Assembly (NCBI GenBank): GCA_965637545.1
Contig: OZ281494.1
Location: 7,874,001-7,938,000 of the forward strand
Source of the DNA: Phallusia mammillata
Lineage: Eukaryota
Direction: 5' to 3'
Length of the DNA stretch: 64,000 bases
Shown: positions 16,296-53,974 of the stretch, one piece after another
Layout: each line of letters opens with the position of its first letter
Numbering within the stretch: the first letter of the stretch is position 1
Notes under the pieces: generated by a model
Database searches by the model: none
The model's input: the letters and a program-made list of their open reading frames with translations, nothing else
What the model was told of the DNA's origin: nothing
Position numbers and translations under genes: made by a program

Positions 16296-19200
16296 ATGCT
16301 TTTTGCAAGATTGTTATTAGTCTTGCTTTTACTATCCTGCTTTGCACAGGTAAGAAAACAATTCTAAAGTTTTTTTATGAAACGTTTCGAAACTGCATTA
16401 TCTACATACACAAAAACAAGATTCTAATTCAGTAAACCACATTTGTATGTTTATCTAAATAAAACATAGTAATGCTCTGTACTGTGTTGTTTCACAACAT
16501 TTTTTTTCTAAACCGCCCAATATTGTAAAAACTTAACAACAGGGGCAGTTGGGACAGTTTGTTTACACTTGAATTAAATTGTATGTGGTCATTGAGTCGA
16601 CCATTTTTTTCTGTTCACATGATCGATAAAGATTGAACAGTTGGTTAATTCGATGTTCTTATTACTTTAGGGTACGTTGGGGGTCAATAAAGATGTGAAA
16701 AATGCAGCCATAACCGACCCTTGTCCCCATCTTCTCACCAGTGGGGTGCGGCCATTATTGGAATTTTTTGACAAAACAGGACAATCTATGAAATGTTGTG
16801 GATGTCCCAAGGATCATTTTGTTCTAAAGCCATGCAGGTAGGTTTGCTACCAACATTGGAACATTTTTCTAATGAAATAATCAAAACAGTTAGTGTGAAG
16901 TGACAAAACGGATTTAATGTCATTTTCGTAATCCTACTACCGTACCAGCTAGTCTTAATTTGACATAGCATACACTAGAGTTCACGTTTGTTATTCCTAA
17001 GGATGATAAATAAAAACCATGCTGTTTTCAGTGACGGATTCATTTCTGAATGCCGGTCATGTCCTCCTGGAACGGAGTTGAATAAAACTGTACATGGCAG
17101 TGGACTAGAAGGATGTACACAAATCCCAACAACAGTGCCACCGGAAGAAATTTCCGATGATCAAAGGTAAGTTTCGCAATCGTCGAAGTAGCGCACAACC
17201 TTTTTGTTATTGTCCATGTTCACTGAGTTCAAACAAAAGGTCTACTGGCATGTATGTTGAGCCCCTGGCAGCATGTAATAACTCCGGTACCTTGTTGAAA
17301 CAAACGGCCTTCATAAACCGTTTTGCCCGCCGATAATGAAACATAATCAAACAAACGTTTTACCTTCTATCACCAACATGACAACGTAGCTTATCGAAAT
17401 AGTTGCATTCACTATTGCACCTGACAATAACAGTTATAAGTAACAAATAAGTAACAAACATCGCATCTATATGATACAGAAACAATGATCTAGAAAAAGA
17501 TGATGACAGAACTCAACCACCACAAACAGGTCAGGTCGATTCCAAACCTCCAGGTAAGTTATTTGTTTTTGTTAACCATAACCATATATCACCTATTTCA
17601 TCATGGCTAAAACTTATCCGTTTTTACAGAGAAAGACAAAATCACTAAAGAAAGTTTCACACACCCCGGATATTACTTTTTGGCTGGAGTCTTGCTAAGC
17701 AGTGTTGCTCTTGTTGCTGTTATTTACAAGCGAAATGTCCGGTCAGGTCCCATACAGGTAGTGCATGGCGATACAACTCAAAATGTTTATAGAATAAGCA
17801 CTAAATCTGCTGTATTACAGAAAGATGAAACTGAGATTTGGTCACCAAACCAAACACGCTTAATGTAAGTTAAAAAACAAACAAACACTTGTGTGCGACG
17901 GAGTTGCGACTTACTTAGCTATAAGTCCTTATAAACCGTTGGTTTTTCTCTCGTTTTATGTTAAAATCTGTTAAACCTGCGACTACGTGAGCTAAATTTA
18001 ACTGACGTGCTTTCCAAAACTAATCTCTACGCTGTGTTTAATATAATTTACACGCAAAGGAACTGGAGAGAAGACAACACTGTCAGCGTTGGATCTGAAG
18101 CGGACGGTCAAAATTTCGAACTACAGCTCGAAGACGAAACAACCCCAGCTTTGGGGTAAGTAATCGTCACGCGATACATAATAGGTCATGTAGAACGACG
18201 ACAGTTTTTTATGAAAATAAAACTCTGCACAACTCCGTCTAGTTTCGTGGTGAGCCAGACACCCATAAAAGTTAAAAGAAAAACAAAAGCTCGGGTGTTA
18301 AACCAAATGGTGTGGTTAAAGTTGCGATGTTCTTTTAGCCCAGACCAACCGTTTTCCCCCTATTTTTCATATATCATATTTTTTTCATATAGGGAAATAC
18401 ACGAGCTTAACTTAACTTCCGTGCTTTTCAAAACCGACTTATTTACAATCATATTAACTACGTTCAATTCATTTGCAGAGCAAGGAGCTCGAGAGAAGGC
18501 GTTAATGGTAGCGTTGGGTTCGAAGCGGACGCTATAAATTCAGATGAGGCGGTCCTAGATATGAGGTATAAAGCGTAGTAAACGCCATGCGATACTTACT
18601 ACGTCATGCCTTTCCATATACCATAGTTTTGACTTTAAAGCACGTTTAAAACAGTTTCAACATAGGCACAAACTTGCATAACCATTCACTTACTATCCAG
18701 TAAAAGTGGTCTAACACTACAACAGTAATGAAACCGTGCAAATTTTTAAATATTAATCCTAATTATACAATGTTAAATTTTATTTTCAAATATAAAACAG
18801 CGAAGACGAGGAACCTGAAGCAACCAAAGAGAAACTTCACACAAAAAATGTGAAGAATGATGATGAAGATGCAACCGTTCTATCTACAACACACGAAGAG
18901 CCGGAAAACCCTAAAGATAAAGCTACTCCCGATGGGGACCCATCGGCTGTTATCCGCGAACCACCAGTAAGACCATCAGTGAGCAATTCCGATGATCTGG
19001 CTGAAGACGGGCCTACGGTTGAAGGACAGGTGCCACAGCCGATACAACAAAGGGGTGTTGCATCTGCTAGTAACATGGTAGGAAGTGCAAGCCGGATTGA
19101 GCATGGTGGTGGTGGTGCTAATACCGGCCCACCCATTCAAAACATGACTCGAAACGCAAGAGGAGTGGAAATTGAAAGACGTAAGTTTAATTTTTTGCCT

Positions 19201-19978
19201 ATTGTTTCCACTGAAAAGAAACCAATTTAATGATGGAGTAAAAGAATAAATTATTTTGTCTGCTGCAAATTATCTTCTAAAAATGGACAGTTTTTACGTA
19301 CAATCAAAACAACACAGCGATAACCAAAATTTTTGTCACTCCAAAAAAAAAATGGAAGTGTACAAACGTTTCAATACGAAAAAACAGATTCCAAATTTTG
19401 GGAGCTGCTAACACTGATAACTGCATATAGTTATTTGTAGCAAATGATATTTTATATGCTCGAACTATAATGTTCAGAAACAGCAACAAAGAAAACTTGT
19501 CAACGGCTTTTATATTATTGGCACCATAAATTTAAAAACTTGTGCCTAACAGGTAACTGTTTGACAGAAACATATTTCATGAACCATATGTTTTTAGTTA
19601 TGCAACTCGAGGACCTCGTGATACATTCAAAAACGACTCCGGTATCCCAAAATGACTCGGTTAAGGTCCTAAGTCATTTTCAAGTGCCAGAAAACATCAA
19701 GAAGACGTTGGCAAATGAGTACAAAAATGGTACGTGGTTTGTCCGTAGATCGATTTTTTTACTTACTTGAATGAAGGTTGAAAATGAATGTCGAAGACTG
19801 ACAGCAGATCTTTCATACAGACAACGATCCCTTGACGTACCTCTACAAGGCTCTAAAAGAAATTCGCAAAAACTCGTCCGACATTACAGTCGAAATACTC
19901 ATCTCATACTGGATGAAGAACGGAATGAGAGAGATGGCCACATATGTGGCTGGCGAGATGGGTATCACTGCCATTTAA
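16296..19978 (+). CDS. g3: TNFR-like death-domain receptor (~484 aa, 11 exons)
   Basis: Exons 16296-16349, 16671-16837, 17032-17166, 17480-17553, 17630-17757, 17821-17864, 18060-18155, 18479-18565, 18801-19180, 19598-19729 (132 nt), 19821-19978; 1455 nt in frame. Signal MLFARLLLVLLLLSCFAQ; CRD DPCPHL..KCCGCPKDHFVLKPC|..ECRSCPPGT..H..C; DD-like ..ITVEILISYWMKNGMREMATYVAGEMG. Confidence 0.88.
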
Positions 19979-29100: not shown

Positions 29101-31566
29101 CCATCTGTGTAAATTTCTGCCAAATCCATCAAACATTTGATGGAAAAACGTGTCGGACAAACTTTGGGGGAAAAATACCCATTTTAGGGGACTAGCGGGG
29201 TAAATACCAAAAACGTGGGATGCACATTTACATAACTATATCCATCATCTGTTTAAATTTCATCAAACATTTGATGGAAAAACGAGTCGGACAAACTTTG
29301 GGAAGAAAAAAAAGAAGAGAAATAACAAACAATTTGAGTAAAATCACTATGTAACCCCTTCAGGGAAGGGGACACATAAAAATAGCTATGTACTTACGCA
29401 ACTAAAAGTCACCGGGTACGCCAATCACTTTTCGCATATTATGCCAACAGAAACCACCACAAACAAACCAGTGAAATTCCTAACACAGACCTTAACACGA
29501 CTCCACCAACACAAACACAACAGCCAGATGCACTACCGCCAGGTTAGTTACGTTATTAAAAGAAAACAAACCAGACTTTTTTTTAACAAACCAGACCAAA
29601 AATTGCCTAAACTGATCTATCTACACAGAGAAAGACAAAACCAAGATTGTTGTCGATTGGGTTACCATCATTTTTATTGTTGCTGTTGCTCTTGCTGTTT
29701 TGGTGACTTTTGTCGTAATTAAGTGGAAGGACAGGTTCTGTCTCAATCAGGTAGAAAACAAATCTCTGAGTAATAATACAGAGCAATAAAATCCCTTTTT
29801 TACACACACAGAATGGTGTCGCAGCGGACAAAGCACCCGAAAGGTAAGCAAAAAGCCTAAATAAATTAAACGAAGTGCGATTATGAATAATGGGTTTACT
29901 TTGTATTAAGGCGTAAGTGCAAACTACTTAAAATTTAAAACCAGTAGAAAAACATAGTATCTTCTGTGTGCTTGATGTTCTCATAATTTCTCACGTTGAA
30001 AATGTTGAACATTCTTTTTCAGAGTTGAAGGTTCAAGAGAAGACATAGAAACCAGTTTTAGTCTGAAACCTGACGAAGCTAAACCTCCAAACCAGGTCGG
30101 ATGCGCCAGTTTCAACACACAAGACGAAACCACACCCGCTTTGAGGTAAGGTAAACAACAGGCCCCATTGAATGTGGAGTCTCAGTTCCTCTTGCAATGT
30201 GCATAACAGTTTACCTTGTTTGACTTGTTTCCTTACCTGAAATCTTATGCGACAAATTAGTTTTAAACAACAGGGTTTAATACTTATCTAAGTAACAGAT
30301 TTGTTTTTATTTATATACGTGCTTATCTTTTAAATTAACTTAAAAGCTTGAGAAAATTTATTTATATACGTGCTTATCTTTTAAATTAACTTAAAAGCTT
30401 GTAGCATATTTGTTTCTGCACCGAAACACAATGTTGAACAAAAGTCGTCTTGTAAATCCACATCCTCTTCTAAGTTTAAAACAACTGCATTTTTTACAGC
30501 AAGAGCAAGGCACCAAAGCCAACCAAAGAAAAGCTTTCCACAAAAGCTGCAGAGGAGGAAAGCGAACAATGTGAGTCTCTGCTTGCCACAACACACGACG
30601 AGCCTGCATCCAAACTCAACGCCATTGGTGATGGGGATTACTCTGCCCTTATCCGCGAACCGGATCCACCAGAAAGACTATCAGTGAGCAATTCCCATGA
30701 TCTGGCTGGAGATGGGCCTACAGCTGAAAGACAGATGCCACTACAGATCGAACAAAGGGATGGTGCATCTCTTGACATACCAGGACATTCAAACATGATA
30801 GATATGGAGCATGGTGGTGCTGGTAATCCTGGACCACCAATTCAAAGAGGTTCTGCACAACTACAGATGGTACAAAACACAAATCAGAACATAAGAGAGC
30901 GGGAAATTAAAAGGCGTAAGTAAAAACCAATTTAATGATTGGGCAATAAATAAATCTTATGTCAATTTTCAAGTATTTTTTCACGTAAAATCTGAAGAAC
31001 AATATACAATGGCCAAACCATGTCAGTTTATTGCAAAACACAAATTGTTAATTTTCAGTTGAACGAGCCGAAAATGACGTGCTACATTCCAAAACCACTC
31101 CGGTTTTTCATTATGACGTGGTAAGACTTCTCAGTCACTTTCAAGTGCCAGAAAACACGAAGGAGAGGTTGGCAAATGAGTACAATAATGGTACGTGATG
31201 ATTTAGTCGTAAATCTATTTACGGAAAATTTTTGATGCAAAACGAAGAAAATATATGCAATGTCACGGTTTGAACTATGAAACGTGTTTTGTATTTAATC
31301 CGTCTTCACTGACAAGAAGTTAAAAAAATCTAAATTCGTGTCAATAAACATAAGTAAAACGCTATACGCTAAAAAAATGCGTTGACTAGTAACAGATTTT
31401 TCATCCAGACAGAAATCCTTTGTTGTACCTCTACAATGCCATGAAAGAAGTTCGCAAGAACTCAGACAACGTTACGGTGGAAATACTCATCGAATACTGG
31501 AGGGAGAATGGATTGACAGAAATGGCAAGATATGTCGCTGACAAAATGGGCATTAATATCGCTTAA
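26163..31566 (+). CDS. g4: TNFR-like death-domain receptor, closest paralog of g3 (~480 aa, 10 exons)
   Basis: Exons 26163-26234, 26331-26491, 26668-26802, 29451-29542, 29629-29750, 29812-29843, 30023-30145, 30500-30915, 31059-31190 (132 nt), 31409-31566; 1443 nt in frame. CRD NPCPHL..QCCGCLRDQYVAVPC|..TCMPCLSGT..H..C; TM WVTIIFIVAVALAVLVTFVVI; DD exons about 62-64% identical to g3 by hand alignment. Confidence 0.87.
27327..27779. mobile_element. Nested Charlie-like MITE
   Basis: TIR-like CAGTGCTTCTCAAC / GTTGGGAACCACTG; flanks do not match, so the TSD is lost. Confidence 0.7.
27862..28452. mobile_element. Nested hAT MITE containing a (TA)n tract
   Basis: TIR CAGGGCT..AAAC / GTTT..AGCCCTG; perfect TSD GTCTAAAA; GGGGTCGCG subterminal repeats; TA microsatellite ~28237-28268. 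Confidence 0.88.
28936..29382 (+). mobile_element. Helentron/HINE (DINE-1-like) non-autonomous element, tentative
   Basis: Two internal copies of a ~130-150-bp core (GCGGGGTAAATA..GGGATGCACAT..AAATTTC..ATCAAACATTTGATGGAAAAACG.GTCGGACAAACTTTGGG) and a perfect 3' hairpin CCCCTTC-AGG-GAAGGGG at 29355-29371. This architecture resembles HINEs; subTIRs were not identified. Confidence 0.5.
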
Positions 31567-40729: not shown

Positions 40730-43700
40730 ATGCTGATCGTCAAAATGTTAGTTACTTTGTCATTGATTATGGTAAGTTTAAACTGCAGTCTTTTATCACT
40801 CAAAATACTATTTTACACTTACACTTTCTTCTTTTAGGCAGCCAACCTCAAAGACATTCCAGATCCTTGTAAGCATTTGGAGGCACGCGAAGGTGGGCGC
40901 AAACTTGTTGAAATGTACAAAAATAATGTTCCGAGGCAATGTTGTGGATGCCCTCCTGGATTTTATCTGCACACTGTCTGCGAGTAAGAAAGTGTTAAAA
41001 AAACGGACCGATTTTGGCAACATCATGAACTGTAGTCCATATCATAAAACATTCAGTTTGTATAGAAATAAAACAATAAAAACCTGTAGTTTTGACCTTT
41101 AATGTTTTTAGGTGTCTATGCATTATAAAAATAATGGCATTATTCTGTAATTTACAACTTGGTACATTTGTTTCAGAAAAGGAAATTTTAATTCAACAGT
41201 GTGTAAAAAATGCAAGAATGGAACTTTTATTGATGAAAAGGCCCATGACAAGAGGAACTGTATCACTCTTCCTAACAAATCAATCACAACACAAGCTCCA
41301 TCCTTTGAAGAAATGTATATTTCTTTCTTGTAACAAGTAGTTTATTTTCTGATAAACCAGGACAAAAGCATTTTGTGATTTAATTCCATGAAAACTACAC
41401 TTTAAAAGTCCTTATTTGTGCAGAAATTCCAATATCAACTCACCAGTGTGTGTGGAAAGTGAAAACGGAAATTTTATTTTTAAAAAACCTCATGACAAAA
41501 GAAGGTGTACCCAGACAACGCAAGCTTCATTCTCAGCAGAAATGTACAACAACTTCTCTATTTTTCAATTTTGAACAGTAGTTAATGCTCAATCAACAAA
41601 ATAGTCATACACTTTTTGACATTGATTGTTTACACACCACAGCAAAACCTAACACTTATTTTTAATGCAGGATTTCGCAATATGTTACACCAAAAATGAC
41701 CACAGAAAAAATTATTGAGTCTGTCACTGAGTGGAGCTTGGGTATAAGTAAGTTATACCTTATACCAAAAACAGCACACCAAAAATAATGCTATTTTATT
41801 TCTTTAGATGATGGGATTGTGCTATTGCTTGGTGTGGCCTTCGGAAAGTTTTTACTACTAATAATTATACAATTTTCAAAGAAAAAAGAAACCACATGGA
41901 AAGATGTTTTTCATAACATTATTGTTTGCTGCAACAAATGTGACAAGGTTTGGTTAACACATTTAAATGTTAAGAGTTAAGATTTTGTTAATCAATGTGC
42001 ATGAATTTTCAATATTTGCAGTGCTTTGACAGGTTGAAAACTGTTTTAAGTACCAAATGTCACATAGGGAAGAGTCTGTGAAACATTACAGAATTGGCTG
42101 ACAGCTTTATGTCACTTATGGTGTTGATCTAAGTAAGTTATAAAACAAGCTATTAAACACACAGGTTCAAAACAATAAGGAAGACGGTGAACCTGAAGAA
42201 AACATCCGATTAGCTGAAAATCCACCAGACTACAGGTATGTAAAGATGAAGTTTTCAGGCAACCTATCACACAAGTGGTTTAATTGCTTCACATGAATAT
42301 TAACTTACAGACCAGAACCTTTTTTTGAATCACAATCATCATCACTACCAAATGATACTCATAACACAAGCAGCTTATCAACTCTAAAAAATACTAGTGT
42401 TGCTGAAGAAAGACAAGATGCTATTCAACTTGGAGCCCAACCCTCAGATGAAACCATACCAAAACAACCCATAGCTGTTCGTGCAAAAACAAAATCTGAA
42501 ACTACTATCAAAGATGCTGTGCCTGAAAAAGAATGTGAAATTTTGATATGTAAGTGAACGAAAGATATACATAGATATATCTGCAATAGTCTTGGACAAT
42601 CAAATTAACTGTGTTGGACTCTTGCCTGTGTGTATGCTTGGTATAGGCACTGTCTTATAAACTTATCAGTAAGTATTTCCCCATGTGCTCAGACACCGAT
42701 TGGACAGCAATTTTGTTCCTTTTTTAGACAGGCTTTGACTTTTGATTGGCAAAATGTAGTCATATTTCCCCCAATTTAAAAAAGAAGTGTTTTACAAGAA
42801 GAAATCGTACAGCTTTCTGTTCAACTTAAATTTTAAATTTGCAGTTATGTTTTTTGCAAAACGCGCTGCAGTAAATAGGCCTGCTGCACTTTTTATATCA
42901 AAAAAACATGCTATCTTTGTATTTTAGTAAAAAGGGTGCTGGCAAGTATTGCCCACAAACAACCACACATTCTACTTGAACAAAAGGATGCATTTAATCT
43001 TGCAAGAAAATTTGATATTGGAGAAATTACTTGTTCACATCTTTCCACAAAACATGCAGGTACCTTTCCATCAATATTTTACAAAATGTCCAATCTAATT
43101 TAAACACTTCCTTAATACTAACCAGTTTTTGTTTTTTTAAAAAAAAGCATTTTTAATGCTGCATTTATTCGATTGTAAGCCATATCTTATAAAGTTGTTT
43201 TACCCTACAGTTTGTGCGGCTTCGATGGAGGCTTATAATTGAGGGCAGCTTATATTTTATTATCATACCCCTATTATTTCCATGTCCCTGCATTTTAAAT
43301 TAGTTCGCTTTCATTTTTTGCATGTACGCATTACACAATTGTTTGCCTGACTAACAAATGTTGACAAAAAATAACACTAATTAGCAACAAAAGGAAGTGT
43401 TACAAAACAATAGAGAGTAACAAGTGACTTACAGTCGAGGGCGATTGACATTATATTGTTGCAACCTTAAAGTTCGACTTACAATTAAATGCAGCTTACA
43501 ATCGAGTAAATACTTTTTTTCCGTTTTTAATACGAGTTAGCAAAGCTTATTTTCGAATCCAACACAGTAAGGTTGGTGTGGTGTATTACATTCACCACCC
43601 AAATTGAAGTTATAGCATAATCCAATTTAGCAAAATACCAAAAGTTAAAAACACTCACATATTAGGTGAAAGTTTACTGATGTGTGAACTTTTGTGTGTT

Positions 43701-43930: not shown

Positions 43931-46328
43931 AACACCAACAGTATTTTAACAATTTAAAATACAAACAAACTTGACTGTAACTTTTAAGTTCCGAATCTGC
44001 CAATTGGTGCAATATTGGCCATACTGGCATTTTGCTTTATTTGTTTTTATCTGTTTTGTTTCTGTCCTTACATGTGCCCAATTATGTCTTACCAGCAGTT
44101 TTTATCATAACAAGCCGACATTTTAACATCTCATAGGAGACACCTTCATGAGGGTCATGACATAAATTTAAACACAAAACAACAAAGGCTATAGAGTTAA
44201 TACATTATGCAACAACTTGTTTATGTCTTCCCAGGTTTTACGCATTTTATTCATTTCATGCTTAATAATTCACTTTTCTTCAAACACTTTTAAATCAATC
44301 TGTACCAGTACCAAGTAGTTTGATTCAGGCCCAACACAGCAGTAAATGCCATTGTTATAATTTGTAAAACTAAAATTACACACCTATTATTATCCAATCC
44401 AGGAAACTTTATGTATTTTAAATTGTTTATATTTTGCTAAACTGTGACTGTCAAACACCTATTATTTAATACCTATTAACAGTTTTCCTAAAGCTGTGCT
44501 TCCCTGTGAACAAAATTGCAATAATACTAGTTTTCATACTAGAACAATTGTAAGACTTTGTGTACATTGCATTGTTATTTATATCATGTCTATTGTCAAT
44601 TTTTATTACTTTTAGTAGTATTTGCACGCATTTACCACAAAAACCAATGGGTAAATATGTACGTTTGATAATAATAGATAGTCTTATTTCTGTGAAAACC
44701 CATTAAGGATGCATATAAAAACAAACAGGTGTTTAACATGTTTTATAAATTAACATGAAGCTGTTAATAGCAGAGCCAAACTGCCTTTAACATTTTATTG
44801 CTTCCTAATGGTTGTGTTGAGGAAATCCTTATTATACGCACAAAGTGATTTATAATATTGCCACTTCACTTGTACAAAACTTTAATAAAAAAACTTACGC
44901 AGATTTTGTTTGCAGTTAGATGCTTAAACCAAAAATCAGTTGCATAAGCCAGTAGAGCGAAGTTTTTAAGCAGCTTTTGGCAATTTCATATTTGGCATGT
45001 TTATGGTGAGCAATTTGGTTGGGCATGTTTTTGTATGATGCAGGTAGAAGCAACGATGCTGAATGTGTTAGTAATATAAGCACAAGGAGTGTGTCGCCAA
45101 GCCATCTACCTCGTTTCAAACCCATTTGGTCATATTTAATTTGACTCTTTAGAAAGACAGTTTACTTTAACCTAACACAGGGATCCACCGGTTTCGGTGC
45201 TGAAGCTTCTTGTTCAGAAAAACACAACACGCCAAGAAGGAATTACAACTTGCAACAAAGTGTTTTCAACGCTATTGTGATGACTCGTTGAGTTGAGTGA
45301 AGTTTACTTCCTTTGGTGAAGCGACGCGATAACACTAAAACAATCACCAAGCCGGAAATAGCTGCGCAACGTTAAAACGATATGAAGCACAAAATGGTGG
45401 ATACCACAACAGGTCGATCATGACTAAACGGCGCTGCAGCTACACTGTGTTATGAAGCGTTATGTGGCTGGCGCTCGCAAGAGAGTGAGTTTGGCGCACT
45501 GTGAGTATAACACGACTGGGGGGAACGTTGGTGGGGTTCGACAAAAAAGATATCACTAAAAGAAACCCTGTCGGATAGTTTTAAACGCCGAAAGGAAGAG
45601 CACACGCACAAAGAATGAAACCCTACAGTAACCGTACACTTCAAATTAAAGTGCAGTTTTTTTTTACTTTAAATCAGCGTTTTTGCTGCTAATTAAATCA
45701 TTTGTCCGCGTTGGCTCTTGAAAATAATAGGTATAACATTTTCTGGGTATAAATATTTTTGTACAGGCCATTTGGAACCGTTTCCTGTTAAGGTTTGTTT
45801 ATGTTTTAAAGGCGACGTCCTTCACCTTCACCTTCAATATAAGTCAACTAAAAGCAAAACAGAACTTTGAATTGGTTGTAAAGTACGCGAAGACGCAAAA
45901 TGTTACTGTAATGTTTAATACGTTTTTCTTGAAGGAGATCATAGCAAAACAATGGCAATAAAACAATCACTATGTCGGAAATAGCTGCGTAACGTTGAAA
46001 CGTTATTGAGAAAACAGCAAAGGCCACTGTTGGTGGATCATGGCAAAATGTGCTGCAGCTACACCGAATTATAAAATTAGATGCGAGTGGGGCTCACAAG
46101 AAATTGAGGTTGGGGTATTGGGTTGACACGATTTGCCTGTCTTTTGAAAAATAAACTTAGTGGTGGAATCAATCTGGCAAAAATAAGCATGTGATTTTCA
46201 AATATATTTTTAAAATCGTCAGGCTATATTAGCTTGAGAAAACTGGGCTAAATTTATTACGCTATGCCGACCACTAGGCGACGCAAACACCTATTCGGAA
46301 TTTCGAAAGAACCAGTCGAGATTTAGGG

Positions 46329-47748
46329 AAAGTTTAATTATTCCCACCTTGACCTACAAAGTCAATGTTGTACCTACCGAATTACCAGAAGCTTTCGTCA
46401 AAAACCTTAAAATAATTTTCTTTAAGTTCATTTGGAACTCAAAATGGGAAAAAGTTAAACGAGCAAAGCTCTGTTGTAATATTGAGGATGGGGGAATCAA
46501 TATGTTTGACCTGGACGCATATCTGGTGTCATTAGATATCAAATGGGTCAATCGATTATTTAACAATTCGTATGCATCTCCATGGAAAGATCTCGAAACC
46601 TCGGTCGGGAGCCCCAGCGAATTCAACTCGTGGTTAAACAGCAGTGTGTCTCCCAACTCAAAACTCTTCCTTCAATCAATCCCCTTACGAACATTAAGAA
46701 AGGCAGTCTCGGCCTGCAAAACATTCGCAAAACTTACAAATCTCCCCGCTAATGTTTATAGACCCCTTTGGTTAAATAAAGAAGTCCGATCACGCCTAAA
46801 ACCCTTTTACATGCGACATCTAATTCGCGCTGGTATTTTCAGTCACCTTGATCTACTTAACAATGATGGTGATTACTATACATACGACGAACTTGCCCTC
46901 AAATTTAACTTTCAGCCAACAAATCAAGATTTCACCTATTTTATCAAATTAGTCGCCGCAATCCCAGACAATTGGGATCTAAACGACCGACAAACTAACA
47001 GAGTACCCCCTGAAACTAAACCATCTTGGTTGCATACCATAGCCCTGCGCGGCACAGTTAAAGAAACTTACAACTTCGTAAAAGATCACACATCAGAACC
47101 GCCAACACAAGAACAGAAAAAGTGGGAAACCGACATAGGGGTTAGTACAGAAAAGCCCAACTGGGGGGAGGTGTACAGGAACACGTATAACTGTACCTTA
47201 GAAACAAACTTAAGAGCATTTCAAATCAAATTAAACTTAAGAGCGGTAATAACAAACAATAAACTATACAATTTTGGCATAGTAACTTCAGAAAAGTGCG
47301 TTTTCTGCCAAAGTTTCCCTGAAACCATTTCTCATTTGTTTTACACTTGCAAAGTCGTCGCCCAATATTGGGAAAATGTTACTTCTTGGATCTCCCGCAA
47401 ACTATTATTGAATATTAAACCGAATGTAGCGTTATGTTTATTTGGAACTCATTTGTACAGTTCTGTTACACCATTGTTAAATTGCATTTTTCTATGTGCC
47501 CGGTTTGTAATATACCAATGTAAATGTATGTGCACAAAACAAACCTACTGTGAACAGATTTATTAACGCATTAAAACTAACGAAACAGTCCGAACTAATT
47601 ATTGCTACTAAAAGAAAAAAACGTGCAGAGTGCTTAGTCAAGTGGTCTGGCCTCTAATTGCCGTTAAATACTTAGCGTTTGTCTGTTTGTTCTGTTGTAC
47701 TTTAATGTATCTGTCTTTCTTCGTGTCTTAGTTATCGCAATAAAAAAA
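46329..47748 (+). mobile_element. 5'-truncated non-LTR retrotransposon (L1/Tx1-like), 3' part of ORF2
   Basis: Translation SLIIPTLTY..FIWNSK..GGI..W..L; zinc knuckle CVFC..ETISHLFYTC; one frameshift near 47540, then KPTVNRF..ELIIATKRKK..KWSGL* ending 47657. AATAAA at 47739 plus A-tail; 15-bp TSD AGTCGAGATTTAGGG at 46314-46328 and 47749-47763. Confidence 0.92.
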
Positions 47749-48030
47749 AGTCGAGATTTAGGGGAAGCACCGTTTGTAGTTTTTCCCTTTAGGTTTTTCT
47801 AAAGCAGATTGTGAATGTAATGATCACAATTAAACTTAACGTTTATGCAAAACTGTGGTAATGTTCTGTGGATAATGTTCAAAACTGTGGATGTGATAAT
47901 GTTCTGTTTTAATACTGTGGTGCGTTGATTTGTGTACCCGTTCAAATTTGAGTTTTCCTTTTAGGTACTAAATTGTATCCATTTGCATGTAGTTTTTTGT
48001 ACTATTTGCAGCTGCGTTAAACAATTCAAA

Positions 48031-51000
48031 ATGTTGCTCATACAATTTTTGGTACTTTGGTTATCAATTATGGTAAGTTTAAATGTGATTTATAACTTAC
48101 AACAAGGTTTTCTTACATTTTATTTCATGCAGGATGTCAATCTTGAAGATATTCCAGATCCTTGCATGCATTTGGAGGCTCGTGAAAATGACCGCAAACT
48201 TGTTGAAATGTGTGGGAATGAAGGCCTGAGACACTGCTGTGGATGCCCTCCAGGGTTTTATCTGCAAACTGTCTGCGAGTAAGAAAAAGTTCAAAGCACC
48301 AAGTTTACAGGGATACTTAAAATAAAGCTCTTGGACATTATTGTGTTTTTGACACTTTATATATCTAAGTATGGAGTAAACTAGAAGACCAGTAAAACTC
48401 GGTTGGCCTAAACTTAACGAGCCAGTCAATAAACAAATAAAAGGAAAAAATTCTTCATTCTCAGTTATTTGTGGCCATGCTGTCTGTTGGAGGGTCTGAT
48501 ACCGTTCAAAATAATAACTATCAATAACCTAATAAACAGCCTAAAAACTTTCTGTATGTAATGTGTTGTATAAAACTTAGTACTTTTGCAGGATAGGGGT
48601 TTTTAATTCAACTGTTTGTGTGAAATGTAAAGATGGAACTTATATTGATGAAAAAGCCCATGATAAAAGGGAATGCATCACTCTTCCAAGCAAACCAATC
48701 ACCACACAAGCTCCATCCCCAACAGAAACGTACAGAAGTTTTGGGTGGTTTGTTGTAAAGCAACACAAAATTACAACTAATTTGTTTGATACATTTCTAC
48801 TTGAAAGATATCTCCATGAGGAAAGTAAATATAAAATTGTACTTTTTCTTACAGGTCTTCCCAGCCTTGCAACACAGAAACAATGCATGTTGACAGTAAT
48901 ACTTTATGTGGCACAGATTGGACAACCACCTTTGTGTGTAAGCCTTTTAAATTACAAGTTACAGCAGCACTTAGTTTAGAGCCTGCTCTTGTTCCAGATG
49001 GACTTCTCGCTGGCATTCCACTTGGTATGATACTTGGAATGTCATTACTATTGTTGATTATACAATATGGAAAGAAAAACAATACCAAATGGAAAGACAT
49101 TTTCCCTTGCTCCTGTCAAAAGGTTTGTTCATCCGTTTTTGCATGTTGATTGACAACCATTTTAGAGCGTCTTGGTCATCATGTTTGACAGTAACTTCAG
49201 TTTTTAAAGCCTGTTTTCATCGCCAGTTTAAGTAATTGAATCATTTATTAAAATTGTCCACTTAAGGTGGGACCGTTTAACATGTAACAAGCTATATATA
49301 ACATTCTAATCATTTCACTATGGTTAACTGTGTTTAAGTATCTTAAAGATTTATGACTTTTGATTTTGATGTCAACTATTTATGTGTTAGGATCAAAAAG
49401 TGCAACAACCCAGTGTTCATAAATTGCAAGACATGAACCCCCCAAATAATGAAGATGACAGGTACATTACACAAACAAATTCAGACAACTGGTCAAAGTA
49501 GGTTATGGTACTGTTTTGTGAACTCTTTTAAACAACAGCTAATAAGATTCTATTCTGATAACTAAAGCATGGATTTAATGATTAATTACTTGTAGACAAG
49601 CACCAAGCACACATCAGGTAGATACACAATCATCATCAAAATCACCAAATGGAACTCAAAATTCTAACCTACAAAAAAAGGGAAACACCCAAAATACTGC
49701 AAATAATACTACTGTATCAGTAACAATAGAAAATCATCTTGCCGAGGATAACCTATCACAACCAGGTGATACTCAGCCGAATACTAATGTCCCAACAACA
49801 CAATATGCAAGTGGCTCACAATTGACTGGACATATTGAAAATGAAAGTAGGTTACAAATGATGGAGAATACAGGAGTTGATGAGGAAAATGCACCACTGC
49901 TAAATGGAACTCAACAGAACAGCAATGGATCAACAACGCAGAAAAATACTCAGAATGCAAGTAACTCACAACTGCCCGAACATACTCAAAATGGAAGTAG
50001 TGTGCAAGTGAGAAAAAGTATAGAAGTTAATGAGGAAAATGAACCACTACTAAATGGAACTCAACAGAACAGCAATGGATCAACAACACAGGAAAATACT
50101 CAAAATGCAAGTAGCCCAAATTTGCCCAAACAAGATCAAAATGGAAGTAGCTTACAAATAAGAAAAAATGCAAAAGTCACTGAGGAAAATCTACCCTCAC
50201 CACATGAAACTCAGCAGAATACCAATGGCCTAACAGCAAAGAATGCAAGTGGCTCACAAATGCTGGAACATGCTCAGAACGGAAGTAGCGTACAAATGAG
50301 GCAAAGTACAGAAGTTGATGAGAAAAATGCACCACTTCTAAATGAAACTCAGCAGAATACCAGTGGCTCAACAACACAGGGTGCAAGTGGCTCACAAATG
50401 CCCGAACATGCTCAGAATGGAAGTAGCTTACAAATGAGGGAAAGTACAGAAGTTGATGAGGAAAATGTACCACTACTAGATGAAAGTCAGCAGAATGCTA
50501 ATGGCCCAACAACACAGGAAAATACTCAGAATGCAGGTAGCTCACAACTGCCTGAACAAACTCGAAATGGAAGTAGCTTACAAATGCCCACATATGCTCA
50601 GAATGCAAGTAGCGTACAAGTGAGGGAAAGTACAGAAGTTGATGAGGAAAATGTACCACTTCTAAATGGAAGTCGGCAGAATACTAGTGCCTCAACAACA
50701 CAGGATGCAAGTAGCTCACAATTGCCCGAACATACTCAAAATGTCACTGAGGAAAATGTACCACTACTACATGGAACTCAAAAGAACAGCAATGGATCAA
50801 CAACACAGGAACATACTCAGAATGCCAGTAGCTCACCATTGCCTGAACATGCTCAAAATGGAAGTAGCTTACAAACGAGAGAAAATATGGAAGTCGCTGA
50901 AGAAAATCTACTCTTACCACATGAAACTCAGCAGAATACCAATGCCCTAACAGCACAGAAAACAAGTGGCTCACAAATGCCCGAACATGCTCAGAACAGA

Positions 51001-53314
51001 AGTAGTGGACAAATGAGGCAAAATACAGAAGTTGATGAGAAAAATGTACCACTACTAGATGAAAGTCATCAGAATACCAGTGGCTCAACAACACAGGAAA
51101 ATACCCAGAATGCAGGTAGCTCACAATTGCCCGAACAAACTCAAAATAGAAGTAGCTTACAAATGGGGAAAAGTACACAAGTTGATGAGGAAAATGTACC
51201 ACACGAAATTCAACAGAATACTAATAACTTTACAATGCAAGATTCCCAAAATACAAGTACCTCACAAATAGAGGAAAATACTGTCATTGTTCAAAACATA
51301 TCCCCTACCCAGCTTGAGGTCGCACCTTCAAACGAAACTGTAGCGAAAGAACCTGTTTCCAAAACTATCACCAAGGATGTTTTTTCGACGAAAAATTGTG
51401 AAATTTCTATGGGTAAGTTGACAAAACAGGGTGTACTTTTAAACATCCACTGCAAGGTCAAACTGTGTCTAACTGTGCACAGTCTAAAAAACAATATATT
51501 ATAACACATAGGAAAACTAATGTTTTTTTCGACAAAAGCACACAAGCATATGTGTAAGTCTATTAATTAAAGTATCTTCCTTCATTGTGATTATTGATGT
51601 AATAAACAAAACTGACATTGTTTCATAAAAACAATTGCAAATAAGTAAATTGGGTTAAAAGTTGGCCTAGATTTCAAATTAGAAAACAGCACCAAGGATA
51701 TTTTAAAGAAAAAAAAATTAACAAAATCTCAATTGTGTCCTGTTTTTTTAGTGAAAAACGTTCTGACAAGTATTCCACAAAAACATAAAAGTATTTTCCT
51801 TGAACAAAAGCATGCTGATGCTCTAGCTAGAAATCTGGACATATCAGAGATTGATTGTGCAAATTTACGCAGAAAAAATGAAGGTAAGCATTTTGAGTAC
51901 ATTGTTTCTTTTAAATCTCTACTTCAAATGCATTATTTTGGATTATAAAGCTGATACTTGTTGGTACATTGTAAATACTGTACACTGTGAATAACCTGTA
52001 CAATTATACCCAATTACAATTGGTGAAAAGTAAACCTACACCTGAGCTGTCATGAGATGCACATAGTATTTATACGAACAAAGAGTTGCTAAAACAAATT
52101 GTTTCTGGAAAAAAATAGGGCAGGTGATATGTCATGACTCCTTTAGGTGCAAAAAAGTGTTTAAAAACGTTTGTTTTATTTCGTATGAAAATTTTATTTT
52201 TCCATCATCCTTATTTTGGGGTCCATGTCGATGGCAACCATGATTATAGAACAGGGACATTCAAATACTGCAAATTTTGCTAAGTGTCGCCTGTGAACAT
52301 TTTCTGCATGCGATGTTTGACTCACATTGCATAAACAATGGATTCTGTTTAATAAAGATAAGTTATACATCTTCAAGTGCAGGTCAATAGGTAACCAGTA
52401 AGGGTTAACAATGCCAGTTCATCTTAATTAGTGATGGGACGATACCAGGTTATGAAGCGAGTACCGATACCGAGTACGAGTACCACATGTATATACCTTC
52501 GATACCGAGTACCGAGTACGATTACCGAGTACTTAAGTGTAGTGTTGTACTTAGTTGTATATCACTGGCTAATTTTTTTGCCGTGGTCGGGGTGCAGGCG
52601 TGCACACACACATGCCGAAAAATGTAATCTCCACATGATAGCGAAAATGATATACGTAACCTGGCGGAACCTTTTTCCTGATTTTGTGCTGTCCGAAGCA
52701 AATATAGGCCAAAAGTTGCCCGTATTCTTATGGTGTAAATCGGCCTTCGGTACTCGCACGTTGGTATCGAAAACTGAGACAAAATATTTCGATACCGAGT
52801 ACGAGTATCGATACCACTGAAATCGCTCGATACCATCGATACCGATTACCGAGTACCCGTCCCATCACTAATCTTAATGGCAACATGAATATGCAGAGTT
52901 GCAAAGACTAAAATTTAGTTGTCAGTAACAGAGTGTTTGCAGATGTAAACCTAAGAAACACTATTTTGGTGGCAAAACACTAAATCGTTTAGATTAGTAA
53001 CTGCAGTCTTTAGTAAAGGGATTTCTTCCTTTTTTCACCCTGCCAAGTACTTTTTAAACATCTATTTGACCCTTAATGACGCCAGTTTTTGGGCCACTAT
53101 GTGACACTTCTATACCAGTGTACTAAACATATACAACTTTTATAAAAAAACAGAAAACATCATTCAACATTTTGTGGAGATTGTGACATTTGTTCATAAC
53201 CGAGATGGAAATCAATTTACAGCCAAAATATTCCTTGACAAACTGAAGGATGCAGAGCTGCTTTTGTTATCAGAAACAATTGAAGAAGAATTAAAAAGTC
53301 AGCTGCCTAAGTAA
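48031..53314 (+). CDS. g7: TNFR-like death-domain receptor with ~600-aa repetitive cytoplasmic linker, closest paralog of g6 (~904 aa, 9 exons)
   Basis: Exons 48031-48072, 48133-48278, 48592-48729, 48855-48937, 48998-49122, 49391-49461, 49596-51412, 51752-51883 (132 nt), 53154-53314; 2715 nt in frame. CRD DPCMHL..HCCGCPPGFYLQTVC|..FNSTVCVKCKDGTY..HDKREC; TM LLAGIPLGMILGMSLLLLIIQY. The 560-aa ORF-track hit 49822-51504 is the repeat exon. Confidence 0.86.
49840..51290 (+). repeat. Coding tandem repeat, 10 units of ~45-50 aa (~135-150 bp), in the g7 cytoplasmic exon
   Basis: Recurring EV(D/N/T)E(E/K)N(A/V)PLL..QQN..GSTTQ..QNAS.SQ(L/M)PEH.QNGSS(L/V)Q; indels keep the reading frame. Confidence 0.95.
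52429..52870. mobile_element. hAT MITE (TAGTGATG-type TIR) in the last intron of g7
   Basis: TIR TAGTGATGGGACG / CGTCCCATCACTA; perfect TSD ATCTTAAT; dense GTACCGA/TACCGAG subterminal repeats. Confidence 0.93.
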
Positions 53315-53974
53315 CTGTATTACACACTATATTGTGTTGTACATGAGAGTATGTACATAAAAATGTACTACTGATTGTATGCAAACTATAAAAACAGAGA
53401 ATTCAGCAAATCTCTTTATGTCTGACCTTTTAAAGGCACAATGCTAAATAAATAAACCTTGCAAAAACTTCTTTTAATTAAGTGCCAAAATTGTTTTAGC
53501 CATTGGCATTTCACAGTTCCAGTTTGTTGCACATTTAATGTTTACAGTATTACATGTAATGTCTTCCCGCATTTTTTGTACAGCTTTTTGTAAATGCCCT
53601 TTAAACAGTGCATGCAAAACTGTAAGTACTCAAAGATTTGTTGAAACAAAAAGCAATGTGATTGATTTGTGCCAAAACCTGTTGGATCAACTTTTGTATA
53701 TTATTATCTATGCAAGGTTCATGGGCCAAAAAGATTAAAAAAAATTCTTCAGTTCTATATTAGTTTATTTTGGATATTTGAAAATGCTAATGCATGTGCA
53801 TATGTGGATGTTTTGCAAATTTATTTTATTTTTTATGCTTGGCCAACACTGTGTACAGCAATAAATAATTTACTGTCTAACAGGTAAAATCAAACTAAAA
53901 TTGCATGTCTTTTTTTAAACTCTGTTTAAAAATGTGACAGTAAACTTATTTACAGTTAAATATCTGTTTCAATT

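What the first reader, a model, noticed from the sequence alone, without database searches (positions are those of the whole stretch)
49596..51412. g7: ~600-aa cytoplasmic repeat tether multiplying an acidic dileucine sorting motif
Seen: the 1817-nt exon replaces a 239-nt exon in sister gene g6 and holds 10 units of 45-50 aa; units 2-4 reappear as 7-9, a higher-order duplication. Five units carry an exact [DE]xxxLL with Pro at -1 (EENAPLL, EENEPLL, EENVPLL x3), two have EKNxPLL and one has EENLLL. TTQE occurs 4 times and TEVD 4 times. Known: [DE]xxxL[LI] binds AP-1/2/3 adaptors (tyrosinase and LIMP-II type signals); (P/S/A/T)x(Q/E)E is the TRAF2 major consensus; TEVD is a caspase-6 autoprocessing site, although P1' Glu is unfavourable. 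Inferred: repeat number could tune internalisation or adaptor avidity and hold the DD far from the membrane. I know of no such architecture in death receptors.
Basis: partly seen in the sequence, partly recalled or inferred. Interest (0 to 1): 0.8.

Follow-up and report, generated by a model that had tools for sequence, protein, structure and literature searches.

The report
Expressed repeat linker in ascidian death receptor
One gene in a sea-squirt cluster of TNF-receptor-like death receptors has grown a roughly 600-residue floppy repeat stretch between its membrane anchor and its death domain; it is real and transcribed, but nothing here shows that the repeated "dileucine" sorting motif is under selection.

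Summary
Exon 49596-51412 (1817 nt, AG/GT) is open in one frame only. It holds 9 clear units of 35-62 aa plus 2 degenerate ones.

RNA-derived contigs from four studies join both exon ends to the neighbouring exons and tile its interior. No internal joint was reported. Skipping the exon would frameshift and lose the C-terminal domain.

The gene (904 aa) reads signal peptide, TNFR-like Cys-rich modules, one TM, the repeat linker, then a C-terminal domain. Pfam misses that domain. An AlphaFold model (pLDDT 86.6) matches FADD, RIPK1 and TNFR1 death domains (Z 13.0, 1.9 Å). So the repeats are cytoplasmic.

The genome is Phallusia mammillata (g6 = CAB3262864.1). The repeat occurs nowhere else in this genome, and no relative turned up in the protein searches.

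The functional reading is weak. The LL codons are no more constrained than the rest of the unit (ω 0.63 vs 0.60). The closest units diverge at ω about 1. TRAF2-type motifs occur at chance frequency, and TEVD is poorly kept.

Best reading: a young, weakly constrained, disordered linker expansion. A functional adaptor-binding array remains possible, at about 0.2.

The parts
48031..48072 (+). g7 exon 1: start codon and hydrophobic signal-peptide-like N-terminus (14 aa)
   Evidence: Joint 48072|48133 (GT..AG) in an RNA-derived contig of X5. Hydropathy peak at aa 1-19.
48133..48278 (+). g7 exon 2: first Cys-rich module (CCGCPPGFY...C)
   Evidence: Joints at both ends in contigs. 75% nt identity to g6. 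The g6 ectodomain's best PDB sequence hit is TNFRSF11B, but weak (E 0.24).
48592..48729 (+). g7 exon 3: second Cys-rich module
   Evidence: Joints 48278|48592 and 48729|48855. Weak Pfam Ephrin_rec_like hit, E 0.034, below cut-off.
48855..48937 (+). g7 exon 3b: short two-Cys module. I missed it in my first model; it was found only from RNA joints.
   Evidence: Joint 48729|48855 in all four runs. Joint 48937|48998 in X5 and X6.
48998..49122 (+). g7 exon 4: the single transmembrane segment (about aa 137-158), followed by GKKNNTKWKD (positive-inside)
   Evidence: Top Kyte-Doolittle window 2.45 at aa 140-158. Joints at both ends.
49391..49461 (+). g7 exon 5: 71-nt juxtamembrane exon, the same length as in g6
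   Evidence: Joints 49122|49391 (X5) and 49461|49596 (X1, X5, X12). g6 counterpart examined.
49596..51412 (+). g7 exon 6: the 1817-nt repeat exon (aa 202-808 of a 904-aa protein). Composition is Q/N/S/T/E-rich, net charge -42, predicted disordered.
   Evidence: Both ends are joined to neighbouring exons and the interior is tiled by contigs from 4 studies, with no internal joint. Composition and charge-hydropathy. No Pfam hit.
49729..51318 (+). The repeat array proper. Unit start coordinates: u0 49729, u1 49864, u2 50014, u3 50164, u4 50302, u5 50440, u6 50626, u7 50731, u8 50881, u9 51019, u10 51169 (ends 51318).
   Evidence: Unit table and alignment. TRF. Pairwise identities of 58-91%.
49885..49902 (+). 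Strict [DE]xxxL[LI] match in u1 (EENAPLL). Further strict matches lie at 50035-50052 (u2), 50461-50478 (u5), 50647-50664 (u6), 50752-50769 (u7) and 50899-50916 (u8, EENLLL).
   Evidence: Regex positions 97, 147, 289, 351, 386 and 435 of the exon translation.
51752..51883 (+). g7 exon 7: first half of the death domain (helices 1-3)
   Evidence: Joint 51412|51752 (X12) and joint 51883|53154 (X1). AF2 model and fold matches.
53154..53314 (+). g7 exon 8: second half of the death domain, plus the stop codon
   Evidence: Joint 51883|53154. 85% nt identity to g6. Fold matches.
42311..42549 (+). Sister gene g6: the homologous 239-nt linker exon in the same phase. It holds one proto-unit-like stretch and the shared C-terminal part.
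   Evidence: Sequence and splice sites. tblastn alignment to the end of g7 exon 6. g6 equals cDNA-derived protein P0001 / CAB3262864.1.

Best explanation
g7 is one of nine tandem, lineage-specific type-I receptors of the ascidian Phallusia mammillata. These receptors carry TNFR-like Cys-rich modules, one TM, a disordered acidic linker, and a C-terminal death domain.

After the g6/g7 duplication, the linker exon of g7 grew from about 80 to 605 codons. It grew by repeated in-frame tandem duplication of a 46-50-codon unit; unequal crossing-over or replication slippage is the inferred mechanism. The youngest copies are very recent.

The product is an expressed, intrinsically disordered, Q/N/S/T/E-rich cytoplasmic spacer with an estimated Rg of about 9 nm. 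It puts the death domain on a long leash. It also passively carries six strict and two near copies of one ancestral EENxPLL motif.

The array evolves under weak constraint. Open frame and composition are kept, but individual residues are largely free. The multiplicity of motifs therefore comes from descent, not from demonstrated selection.

Shown: the exon, its splicing, its topology, the death-domain fold, the repeat anatomy, and relaxed omega. Inferred: disorder, the duplication mechanism, and the leash effect on death-domain clustering.
For: Splicing and expression:
- GT..AG joints for all eight introns, including both ends of the exon, appear in contigs of runs from four studies. The interior is tiled without any internal joint.
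- Skipping the exon frameshifts to a stop at aa 214.

Topology:
- The only hydrophobic segments are the N-terminus and aa 137-158. A KK-rich flank follows the TM.

Death domain:
- hhalign of the 8-gene family against Pfam-Death-positive ORFs of the same genome scores 27.4. Column shuffles give 8.1 +/- 1.5, with 0 of 100 reaching the real score.
- The AF2 model has pLDDT 86.6 and six helices.
- The top 27 Foldseek hits are all death domains, with TM up to 0.83.
- VIA-align gives Z 13.0, rmsd 1.9 A over 92/92 residues of the FADD DD. The top 14 hits are all DDs.

Repeat evolution:
- All indels are multiples of 3.
- Pooled omega among units is 0.59. The closest pairs sit near or above 1: u2-u7 1.03, u3-u8 1.01, u4-u9 1.22, u4-u6 3.0 at dS 0.04.
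- For comparison, omega is 0.29 and dS 0.62 for g6 vs g7 over 176 structured codons.
- LL columns are not specially constrained.

Lineage restriction:
- The repeat occurs only in this exon of the 240-Mb genome.
- The word search and the Atlas found no relative.
- The family has 8 genes in the window, 1 just downstream, and one further weak match on another contig (E 9e-4).
- Paralogues have non-repetitive acidic linkers in open frames of about 80-150 aa.

Disorder:
- Mean hydropathy is 0.365, below the Uversky boundary of 0.438. Only 13.7% of residues are order-promoting.
Against: - The frame has stayed open through about 1.6 kb of diverged repeats, and older unit pairs show omega of 0.3-0.5. 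Some constraint therefore acts, and it could include motif function.
- EENxPLL closely resembles proven AP-binding signals (tyrosinase EEKQPLL, LIMP-II DERAPLI; from my own knowledge). It is retained in 6-8 of 11 units, and the first Leu uses four synonymous codons.
- Pairwise omega on 46-codon units that may undergo gene conversion is noisy.
- No full-length transcript was seen, and no orthologue from another species was available.
- Disorder is inferred from composition only.
Confidence: 0.7

Rival explanations
1. The repeats are a selected multivalent array of acidic dileucine signals of the [DE]ExxPL[LI] type (tyrosinase/LIMP-II type). These signals bind AP-1/2/3 sigma hemicomplexes. Copy number would then set internalisation or lysosomal delivery of the receptor.
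For: - Six strict [DE]xxxL[LI] matches, five with Pro at -1 and acid at -4/-5, in an accessible disordered cytoplasmic stretch.
- In u8 the motif survives through a shifted register (EENLLL).
- Leu column 11 keeps Leu through four synonymous codons.
- A single dileucine is needed for DR5 internalisation (PMC11929488). Fas has an LL-like EAYDTLI linked to AP2 (PMC4778973).
Against: - LL codons: omega 0.63 vs 0.60 for the rest. EENxPLL block: 0.54 vs 0.60. Other blocks are more constrained (QNGSSLQM 0.18).
- The motif is lost in u3 and u10, and the acid is moved to -5 in u4 and u9.
- The motif is absent from the g6 linker and is not a family feature.
- One ancestral chance occurrence (my estimate: about 3% per 48-aa unit of this composition), copied by duplication, explains the count.
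- No binding test was possible.
Confidence: 0.2
2. g7 is drifting towards loss of function. The repeat expansion would be a tolerated, mildly deleterious accident in a redundant paralogue. Some alleles may already be truncated before the death domain, giving decoy-like or null products.
For: - One X12 contig that bridges exon 6 to exon 7 carries G>T at 51349. This changes GAA to TAA, 22 codons before the exon end.
- Omega is about 1 for the youngest units.
- Eight similar paralogues lie nearby.
Against: - The variant rests on one contig at depth 4.9, and X1 shows the reference base.
- The reference allele is fully open over 904 codons.
- The structured exons show omega 0.29 against g6.
- The gene is transcribed and correctly spliced in four studies.
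Confidence: 0.07
3. The Q/N-rich repeats form a prion-like or RHIM-like self-assembly module. This module would nucleate higher-order signalling together with the death domain.
For: - 25% Q+N.
- The best-conserved block of the unit, NGSS[VL]Q[VIM]R, loosely recalls the RHIM core region.
Against: - No unit matches the [IV]Q[IVLC]G tetrad. Position 4 is Arg in seven of the nine copies of the block, and the only Gly copy (u9) reads LQMG.
- 17% of residues are charged, net charge is -42, and aromatic and hydrophobic content is very low. This argues against amyloid cores.
- Two earlier follow-ups in this genome found RHIM likenesses no better than chance.
Confidence: 0.03

Closest known systems
Vertebrate death receptors (TNFR1, Fas, DR4/DR5, p75NTR, DR6, EDAR)
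   Same: Type-I layout: Cys-rich ectodomain modules, one TM, a flexible cytoplasmic linker, and a death domain. The g7 domain model superposes on FADD, RIPK1, TRADD and TNFR1 DDs. Single dileucine-type signals are described in DR5 (PMC11929488) and Fas (PMC4778973).
   Different: Neither Pfam TNFR_c6 nor Pfam Death recognises the family. From my own knowledge, the vertebrate linkers are on the order of 100 residues and not repetitive. Here the linker is a 605-residue tandem array.
g6, the sister gene (Phallusia mammillata CAB3262864.1 / A0A6F9DHC2, 'uncharacterized protein LOC100184291', 433 aa)
   Same: Same exon structure and phases. 75-85% nt identity in structured exons, and 60% aa identity over the death domain. 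The homologous linker exon shares its start and end with g7 exon 6.
   Different: Its linker exon is 239 nt, with no repeats and no EENxPLL. It has a PPDY (PPxY) in exon 5 that g7 lacks, and an extra Cys-rich module.
Acidic dileucine sorting signals of tyrosinase and LIMP-II ([DE]ExxPL[LI])
   Same: Sequence pattern: acid at -4/-5, Pro at -1, then LL. Cytosolic and unstructured context. The comparison sequences come from my own knowledge.
   Different: Those signals are single copies in short tails of lysosomal or melanosomal proteins with proven AP binding. Here there are six to eight copies, 140-580 residues from the membrane, untested, and without a selective signature.
Receptor tails with tandemly multiplied short motifs (CD3-zeta ITAM x3, LRP5/6 PPPSPxS x5)
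   Same: A short linear motif is multiplied within a disordered cytoplasmic tail. In this array the multiplication is by internal duplication.
   Different: In those cases each copy is conserved across species and functionally additive (my own knowledge). Here the copies are young, species-restricted as far as could be searched, and weakly constrained.
Coding minisatellites / VNTR exons (for example the mucin and PSGL-1 repeat exons)
   Same: One large exon with head-to-tail in-frame units of about 140-150 nt, higher-order periods, low-complexity S/T-rich product, and an indel-prone region. The g6 linker also differs from its cDNA by a 15-nt in-frame indel.
   Different: Those examples are extracellular and O-glycosylated. 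This array lies on the cytoplasmic side.

Membership tests
Death domain (death-fold superfamily, DD subfamily) | Sequence match to Pfam PF00531 | tested here: not met
   No hit on the spliced 114-aa C-terminus at E<=10. No exon of the window appears among the 22 genome-wide matches. No hit on full-length g6.
Death domain (death-fold superfamily, DD subfamily) | Profile-level homology to bona fide death domains | tested here: met
   hhalign of the family alignment against 9 Pfam-Death-positive ORFs of the same genome: score 27.4 over 69 columns, probability 52%. Column shuffles give 8.1 +/- 1.5 (maximum 13.3; 0 of 100 reach the real score). The reversed alignment scores 15.5.
Death domain (death-fold superfamily, DD subfamily) | Six-helix antiparallel bundle superposable on solved DDs, ranking above CARD, PYD and DED | tested here: met
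   AF2 model with pLDDT 86.6, pTM 0.79 and six helices. Foldseek ranks 1-27 are all DDs. VIA-align gives Z 13.0 and 1.9 A over 92 residues against the FADD DD. Ranks 1-14 are DDs, and the first CARD scores Z 8.8. This rests on a predicted model, not a solved structure.
TNF receptor superfamily | Cys-rich domains matching TNFR_c6 or a solved TNFR CRD | tested here: inconclusive
   No Pfam TNFR_c6 hit on g6 or on the g7 exons. The best PDB sequence hit of the g6 ectodomain is TNFRSF11B, on the C..CPPG.Y...C...TVC..C..G.F pattern, but only at E 0.24. Ephrin_rec_like hit at E 0.034, below cut-off.
TNF receptor superfamily | Type-I topology: signal peptide, single TM, cytoplasmic tail | tested here: met
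   Hydropathy shows only an N-terminal peak and aa 137-158. A Lys-rich flank lies on the C-terminal side of the TM. No dedicated signal-peptide or TM predictor was available.
Acidic dileucine sorting signal [DE]xxxL[LI] | Consensus present in a cytosolic, unstructured segment | tested here: met
   Six strict matches, lying between the TM and the DD in a segment predicted disordered from composition.
Acidic dileucine sorting signal [DE]xxxL[LI] | Motif residues conserved above their flanks | tested here: not met
   LL omega 0.63 vs 0.60 for the rest. EENxPLL block 0.54 vs 0.60. The LL columns rank 10-24 of 46. The motif is lost or shifted in 4 of 11 units. Only a within-gene comparison was possible.
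Acidic dileucine sorting signal [DE]xxxL[LI] | Binding to AP sigma-large-subunit hemicomplexes, and LL-dependent trafficking | not testable with these tools
No complex prediction was sent.
TRAF2-binding motif (P/S/A/T)x(Q/E)E | Occurrence above chance and conserved | tested here: not met
   4 observed against 4.4 +/- 2.0 in composition shuffles. All four are the same TTQE inherited by duplication.
Caspase cleavage site (TEVD) | P4-P1 tetrapeptide with conserved P1 Asp | tested here: inconclusive
   TEVD x4. The P1 column is Asp in 5 of the 9 core units. P1' is Glu in all of them. Cleavage itself is not testable here.

The most novel reading that the evidence does not exclude
The repeat array is a selected, copy-number-tunable avidity module. 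Six to eight tyrosinase/LIMP-II-type dileucine signals would make g7 a constitutively internalised or lysosome-routed death receptor, or a decoy for its paralogues. This would give a rapidly evolving ascidian receptor cluster a trafficking-based way to diversify signalling.
Probability: 0.15. Interest if true: 0.6.

Novelty: new variant of a known kind. Interest (0 to 1): 0.35.

Why it matters
The finding documents a lineage-specific cluster of nine TNFR-like, death-domain receptors in Phallusia mammillata. Ciona is reported to have only three TNFR members (PMC10923776). Standard domain models miss this cluster.

One member of the cluster shows how fast a receptor's cytoplasmic linker can be remodelled by in-frame tandem duplication while the gene stays expressed. 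If the motif array were functional, it would be a natural experiment on motif valency and on linker length in death-receptor signalling.

As the evidence stands, it is mainly a clean example of a young coding repeat expansion in a disordered linker. It also cautions against reading repeated motifs as independent evidence of function.

Tried and rejected
- **First gene model.** My first model used a wrong acceptor for the TM exon and missed exon 3b. The RNA joints corrected it.
- **Pfam on exons and domains.** Single exons, the spliced C-terminus and full-length g6 gave no significant family.
- **PDB by sequence.** Exon 8 alone, the spliced C-terminus and an 8-gene exon-8 profile found no death domain.
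- **Single-sequence AF2.** The model was poor (pLDDT 53) and its Foldseek list meaningless. Only the model built with an 8-row alignment was usable.
- **Alignment A2.** It included exon-7 fragments, which were misaligned onto exon 8. I discarded it.
- **Big HMMER search.** With the g7 C-terminus it found only g6, plus two ankyrin-repeat proteins whose scores come from 5-7 summed weak stretches. I judge those spurious.
- **Word searches.** The repeat exon found nothing, and g6 found only itself.
- **Atlas.** Searches with exon 8 and with the repeat exon gave nothing usable.
- **RHIM reading of NGSS[VL]Q[VIM]R.** Rejected by inspection, since no unit matches the [IV]Q[IVLC]G core.
- **GGA-type DxxLL.** Rejected, because position -3 is Asn.
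- **YxxPhi and NPxY.** None in the exon.
- **Dense NxS/T sequons and S/T-Q motifs.** Sequons number 33 vs 17.6 expected; S/T-Q motifs 40 vs 18.7. I take both as by-products of composition and copying. The cytoplasmic side rules out N-glycosylation.
- **Complex prediction.** Not used. I make no binding claim, and the AP subunits had no sequence reference.
- **Spliced proteins.** The full 904-aa spliced protein has no reference, so it was never sent to any tool. Only the 114-aa C-terminus was typed in.

Full report
**1. What is in the sequence**

The stretch 49596-51412 is bounded by an acceptor (ttgtag|A) and a donor (ATGG|gtaagt). Its length is 1817 nt. One frame is open for 605 codons, while the other five frames carry 15-55 stops each.

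Tandem Repeats Finder reports periods of 150, 138 and 288 nt, about 10 copies, 66-68% matches. I cut the translation at the E[EK]N anchors. This gives nine clear units, u1-u9, of 50, 50, 46, 46, 62, 35, 50, 46 and 50 aa. Two degenerate units, u0 and u10, flank them. Every length difference is a multiple of three.

- EENAPLL, EENEPLL and EENVPLL x3
- EKNxPLL x2
- EENLLL x1
- TTQE x4 and TEVD x4

The sister gene g6 has its homologous exon at 42311-42549. It is 239 nt, in the same phase, and shares the beginning and end of the g7 exon.

The claimed higher-order duplication (units 2-4 reappearing as 7-9) is only partly borne out. u3 and u8 are clear partners (87% nt). But u2-u7 (83%) is no closer than u2 is to u1, u5 or u9. 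And u9 is closest to u5 (91%), so it looks like a u4/u5 hybrid.

**2. Is the exon used?**

I laid Logan contigs of four runs from four studies on 48000-53400. They show GT..AG joints for every intron of the gene:
- 48072|48133
- 48278|48592
- 48729|48855
- 48937|48998
- 49122|49391
- 49461|49596 (three runs)
- 51412|51752
- 51883|53154

The intron skipping shows these contigs derive from RNA. They revealed one exon (48855-48937) that I had missed, and they corrected the TM-exon acceptor.

Overlapping contigs tile the interior of the repeat exon, from 49594-50038 through to 50967-51412. No internal joint was reported. No single contig spans the whole exon, as expected for short-read assembly of repeats.

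The spliced CDS is 2715 nt, giving 904 aa, with one terminal stop. Skipping the exon would shift the frame and terminate at aa 214.

**3. What the gene is**

The protein has these parts:
- a short hydrophobic N-terminus
- Cys-rich modules with the C..CPPG.Y...C...C..C..G.Y pattern
- one strong TM segment (aa 137-158) followed by GKKNNTKWKD
- a 71-nt juxtamembrane exon
- the repeat exon (aa 202-808)
- a 97-aa C-terminal domain split over two exons

Sequence tools do not recognise the C-terminal domain. Pfam Death finds no exon of the window genome-wide. It finds nothing on the spliced domain or on full-length g6.

Three further tests identify it as a death domain:
- I aligned the spliced domains of the eight paralogues. 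All share the same phase-1 intron. hhalign against nine Pfam-Death-positive ORFs of the same genome scores 27.4 over 69 columns, in the expected register. Column shuffles give 8.1 +/- 1.5, with a maximum of 13.3 in 100.
- AlphaFold2 with an 8-row alignment gives pLDDT 86.6, pTM 0.79 and six helices.
- Foldseek's first 27 hits are all death domains: FADD, Fas, TNFR1, ankyrin, RAIDD, TRADD and RIPK1. VIA-align gives Z 13.0 and 1.9 A over 92/92 residues of the FADD DD. The top 14 are all DDs, and the first CARD scores Z 8.8.

The TNFR nature of the ectodomain is only weakly supported. The best PDB sequence hit is osteoprotegerin at E 0.24. Ephrin_rec_like scores E 0.034, below cut-off.

Since the repeats lie between the only TM and a death domain, they are cytoplasmic.

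**4. Whose gene it is, and how widespread**

The exhaustive HMMER search with the g7 C-terminus found one true relative. It is a 433-aa protein that is g6 itself. It is recorded as Phallusia mammillata CAB3262864.1, 'uncharacterized protein LOC100184291'. So the window comes from this ascidian.

The family comprises the eight genes of the window and a ninth just downstream. There is also one weak match on another contig.

The repeat unit occurs only in this exon of the 240-Mb genome. No protein of comparable length in the 5.8-billion-sequence word index resembles the repeat exon, and the Atlas gave nothing. Other paralogues have non-repetitive acidic linker exons, in open frames of about 80-150 aa.

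Ciona is reported to have three TNFR members (PMC10923776).

**5. How the repeat evolves**

g6 and g7 differ by dS 0.62 with omega 0.29 over 176 structured codons. Between repeat units, dS ranges from 0.04 to 0.88. The array therefore began growing around or after the g6/g7 split and was still growing recently.

Pooled omega among units is 0.59. For the closest pairs it is about 1 or higher (u2-u7 1.03, u3-u8 1.01, u4-u9 1.22, u4-u6 3.0). Constraint is thus weaker than in the folded domains. It seems to act on keeping the frame open and on composition.

- The two Leu columns have omega 0.63 against 0.60 for the rest. They rank 10th-24th of 46 columns.
- The EENxPLL block scores 0.54 against 0.60.
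- The most constrained block is QNGSSLQM (0.18).

The motif is lost in u3 and u10. Its acid is displaced in u4 and u9. It is not present in the g6 linker and is not a family trait. These are small, non-independent samples and may be blurred by gene conversion. Still, they give no sign that LL is specially protected.

**6. The other motifs**

- (P/S/A/T)x(Q/E)E occurs 4 times against 4.4 expected from composition.
- TEVD's P1 Asp column is Asp in 5 of the 9 core units.
- There is no YxxPhi or NPxY in the exon.
- S/T-Q motifs (40 vs 18.7) and NxS/T sequons (33 vs 17.6) exceed shuffles. But every such excess comes from eleven copies of one unit, so it is not independent evidence.

**7. Physical nature (inferred)**

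The exon product has this composition:
- 50% S+Q+N+T
- 12% acidic and 5% basic residues (net charge -42)
- 13.7% order-promoting residues

Mean hydropathy is 0.365, below the charge-hydropathy boundary of 0.438. There is no hydrophobic window. This predicts an extended disordered chain. Denatured-state scaling gives an Rg of about 9 nm (the scaling law is from my own knowledge).

Such a leash would lower the local concentration of death domains under a clustered receptor. It would also enlarge their reach. This is an inference, not a result.

**8. Verdict**

The best explanation is a young, lineage-specific, weakly constrained tandem expansion of a disordered linker exon in one paralogue of an ascidian death-receptor cluster. 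A functional AP-binding array remains a live minority hypothesis. EENxPLL is a very good look-alike of tyrosinase/LIMP-II signals, and single dileucines matter in DR5 (PMC11929488) and possibly Fas (PMC4778973).

One low-depth contig carries a premature stop at 51349. This should be checked before assuming every allele encodes the death domain.

**Limits**

- There is no full-length transcript, no orthologue and no population data.
- The fold evidence rests on a predicted model built from eight paralogous rows.
- The TNFR assignment of the ectodomain is unproven.
A follow-up on an overlapping stretch exists but was withheld.

Noticed in passing
window 51349: In run X12, the contig that bridges exon 6 to exon 7 reads T instead of G. 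This turns GAA into TAA, 22 codons before the end of the repeat exon. It would truncate the protein before the death domain. It rests on one contig at depth 4.9, and X1 shows the reference base.
   Followed up: partly
window 52344-52886 (intron 7 of g7): An interspersed repeat with very high summed depth in all four runs (up to about 1000). It shows many variants and a back-joint 52810->52498. It is flanked by CGATACCGAGTAC-type short repeats and a 22-nt inverted repeat. There is no Rfam match. It is probably a multicopy mobile element transcribed elsewhere in the genome.
   Followed up: partly
window 42222-42233 (g6 exon 5) versus 49391-49461 (g7 exon 5): g6 carries PPDY, a PPxY-type motif (Nedd4-family WW-domain ligand, from my own knowledge), next to EPEENIRLAE. 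g7 has NPPNNEDD at the same place, with no Tyr. The sister genes may therefore differ in their endocytic or ubiquitin signals.
   Followed up: no
window 10329-10859, 18796-19227 and 30480-30920 (linker exons of g2, g3, g4): These three paralogues share a short conserved linker motif, [TVL]IREPxPPE (the second Pro is Val in g3). It is absent from g6 and g7. In g4 the residues just before it read DYSALI, which matches both [DE]xxxL[LI] and YxxPhi.
   Followed up: no
window 42311-42330 (start of the g6 linker exon) versus P0001: The cDNA-derived g6 protein (CAB3262864.1) has five extra residues (PEQQGAQPFFES against genomic PEPFFES) and an R/Q difference. This is an in-frame 15-nt indel or an alternative acceptor. 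Either way, the linker exon is indel-tolerant in g6 too.
   Followed up: partly
G000:C1:7946524-7946649 (L015), about 8.5 kb beyond the window end: A ninth family member's death-domain exon (E 1.8e-4 against the exon-8 profile). The array extends past the window. A further weak match lies on C5:6793999-6794076.
   Followed up: partly
window 48633: An alternative acceptor, 41 nt inside exon 3 (joint 48278->48633), appears in one X5 contig. It would shift the frame.
   Followed up: no
window 46238-47563: A 442-codon open frame lies between g6 and g7 on the + strand and is unrelated to the receptor family. By eye it looks like the tail of a retrotransposon ORF. It was not tested.
   Followed up: no
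window 49596-51412: The exon holds 40 S/T-Q dipeptides (18.7 expected). This formally meets the density of an SQ/TQ cluster domain. It is most simply a by-product of composition and unit copying.
   Followed up: partly
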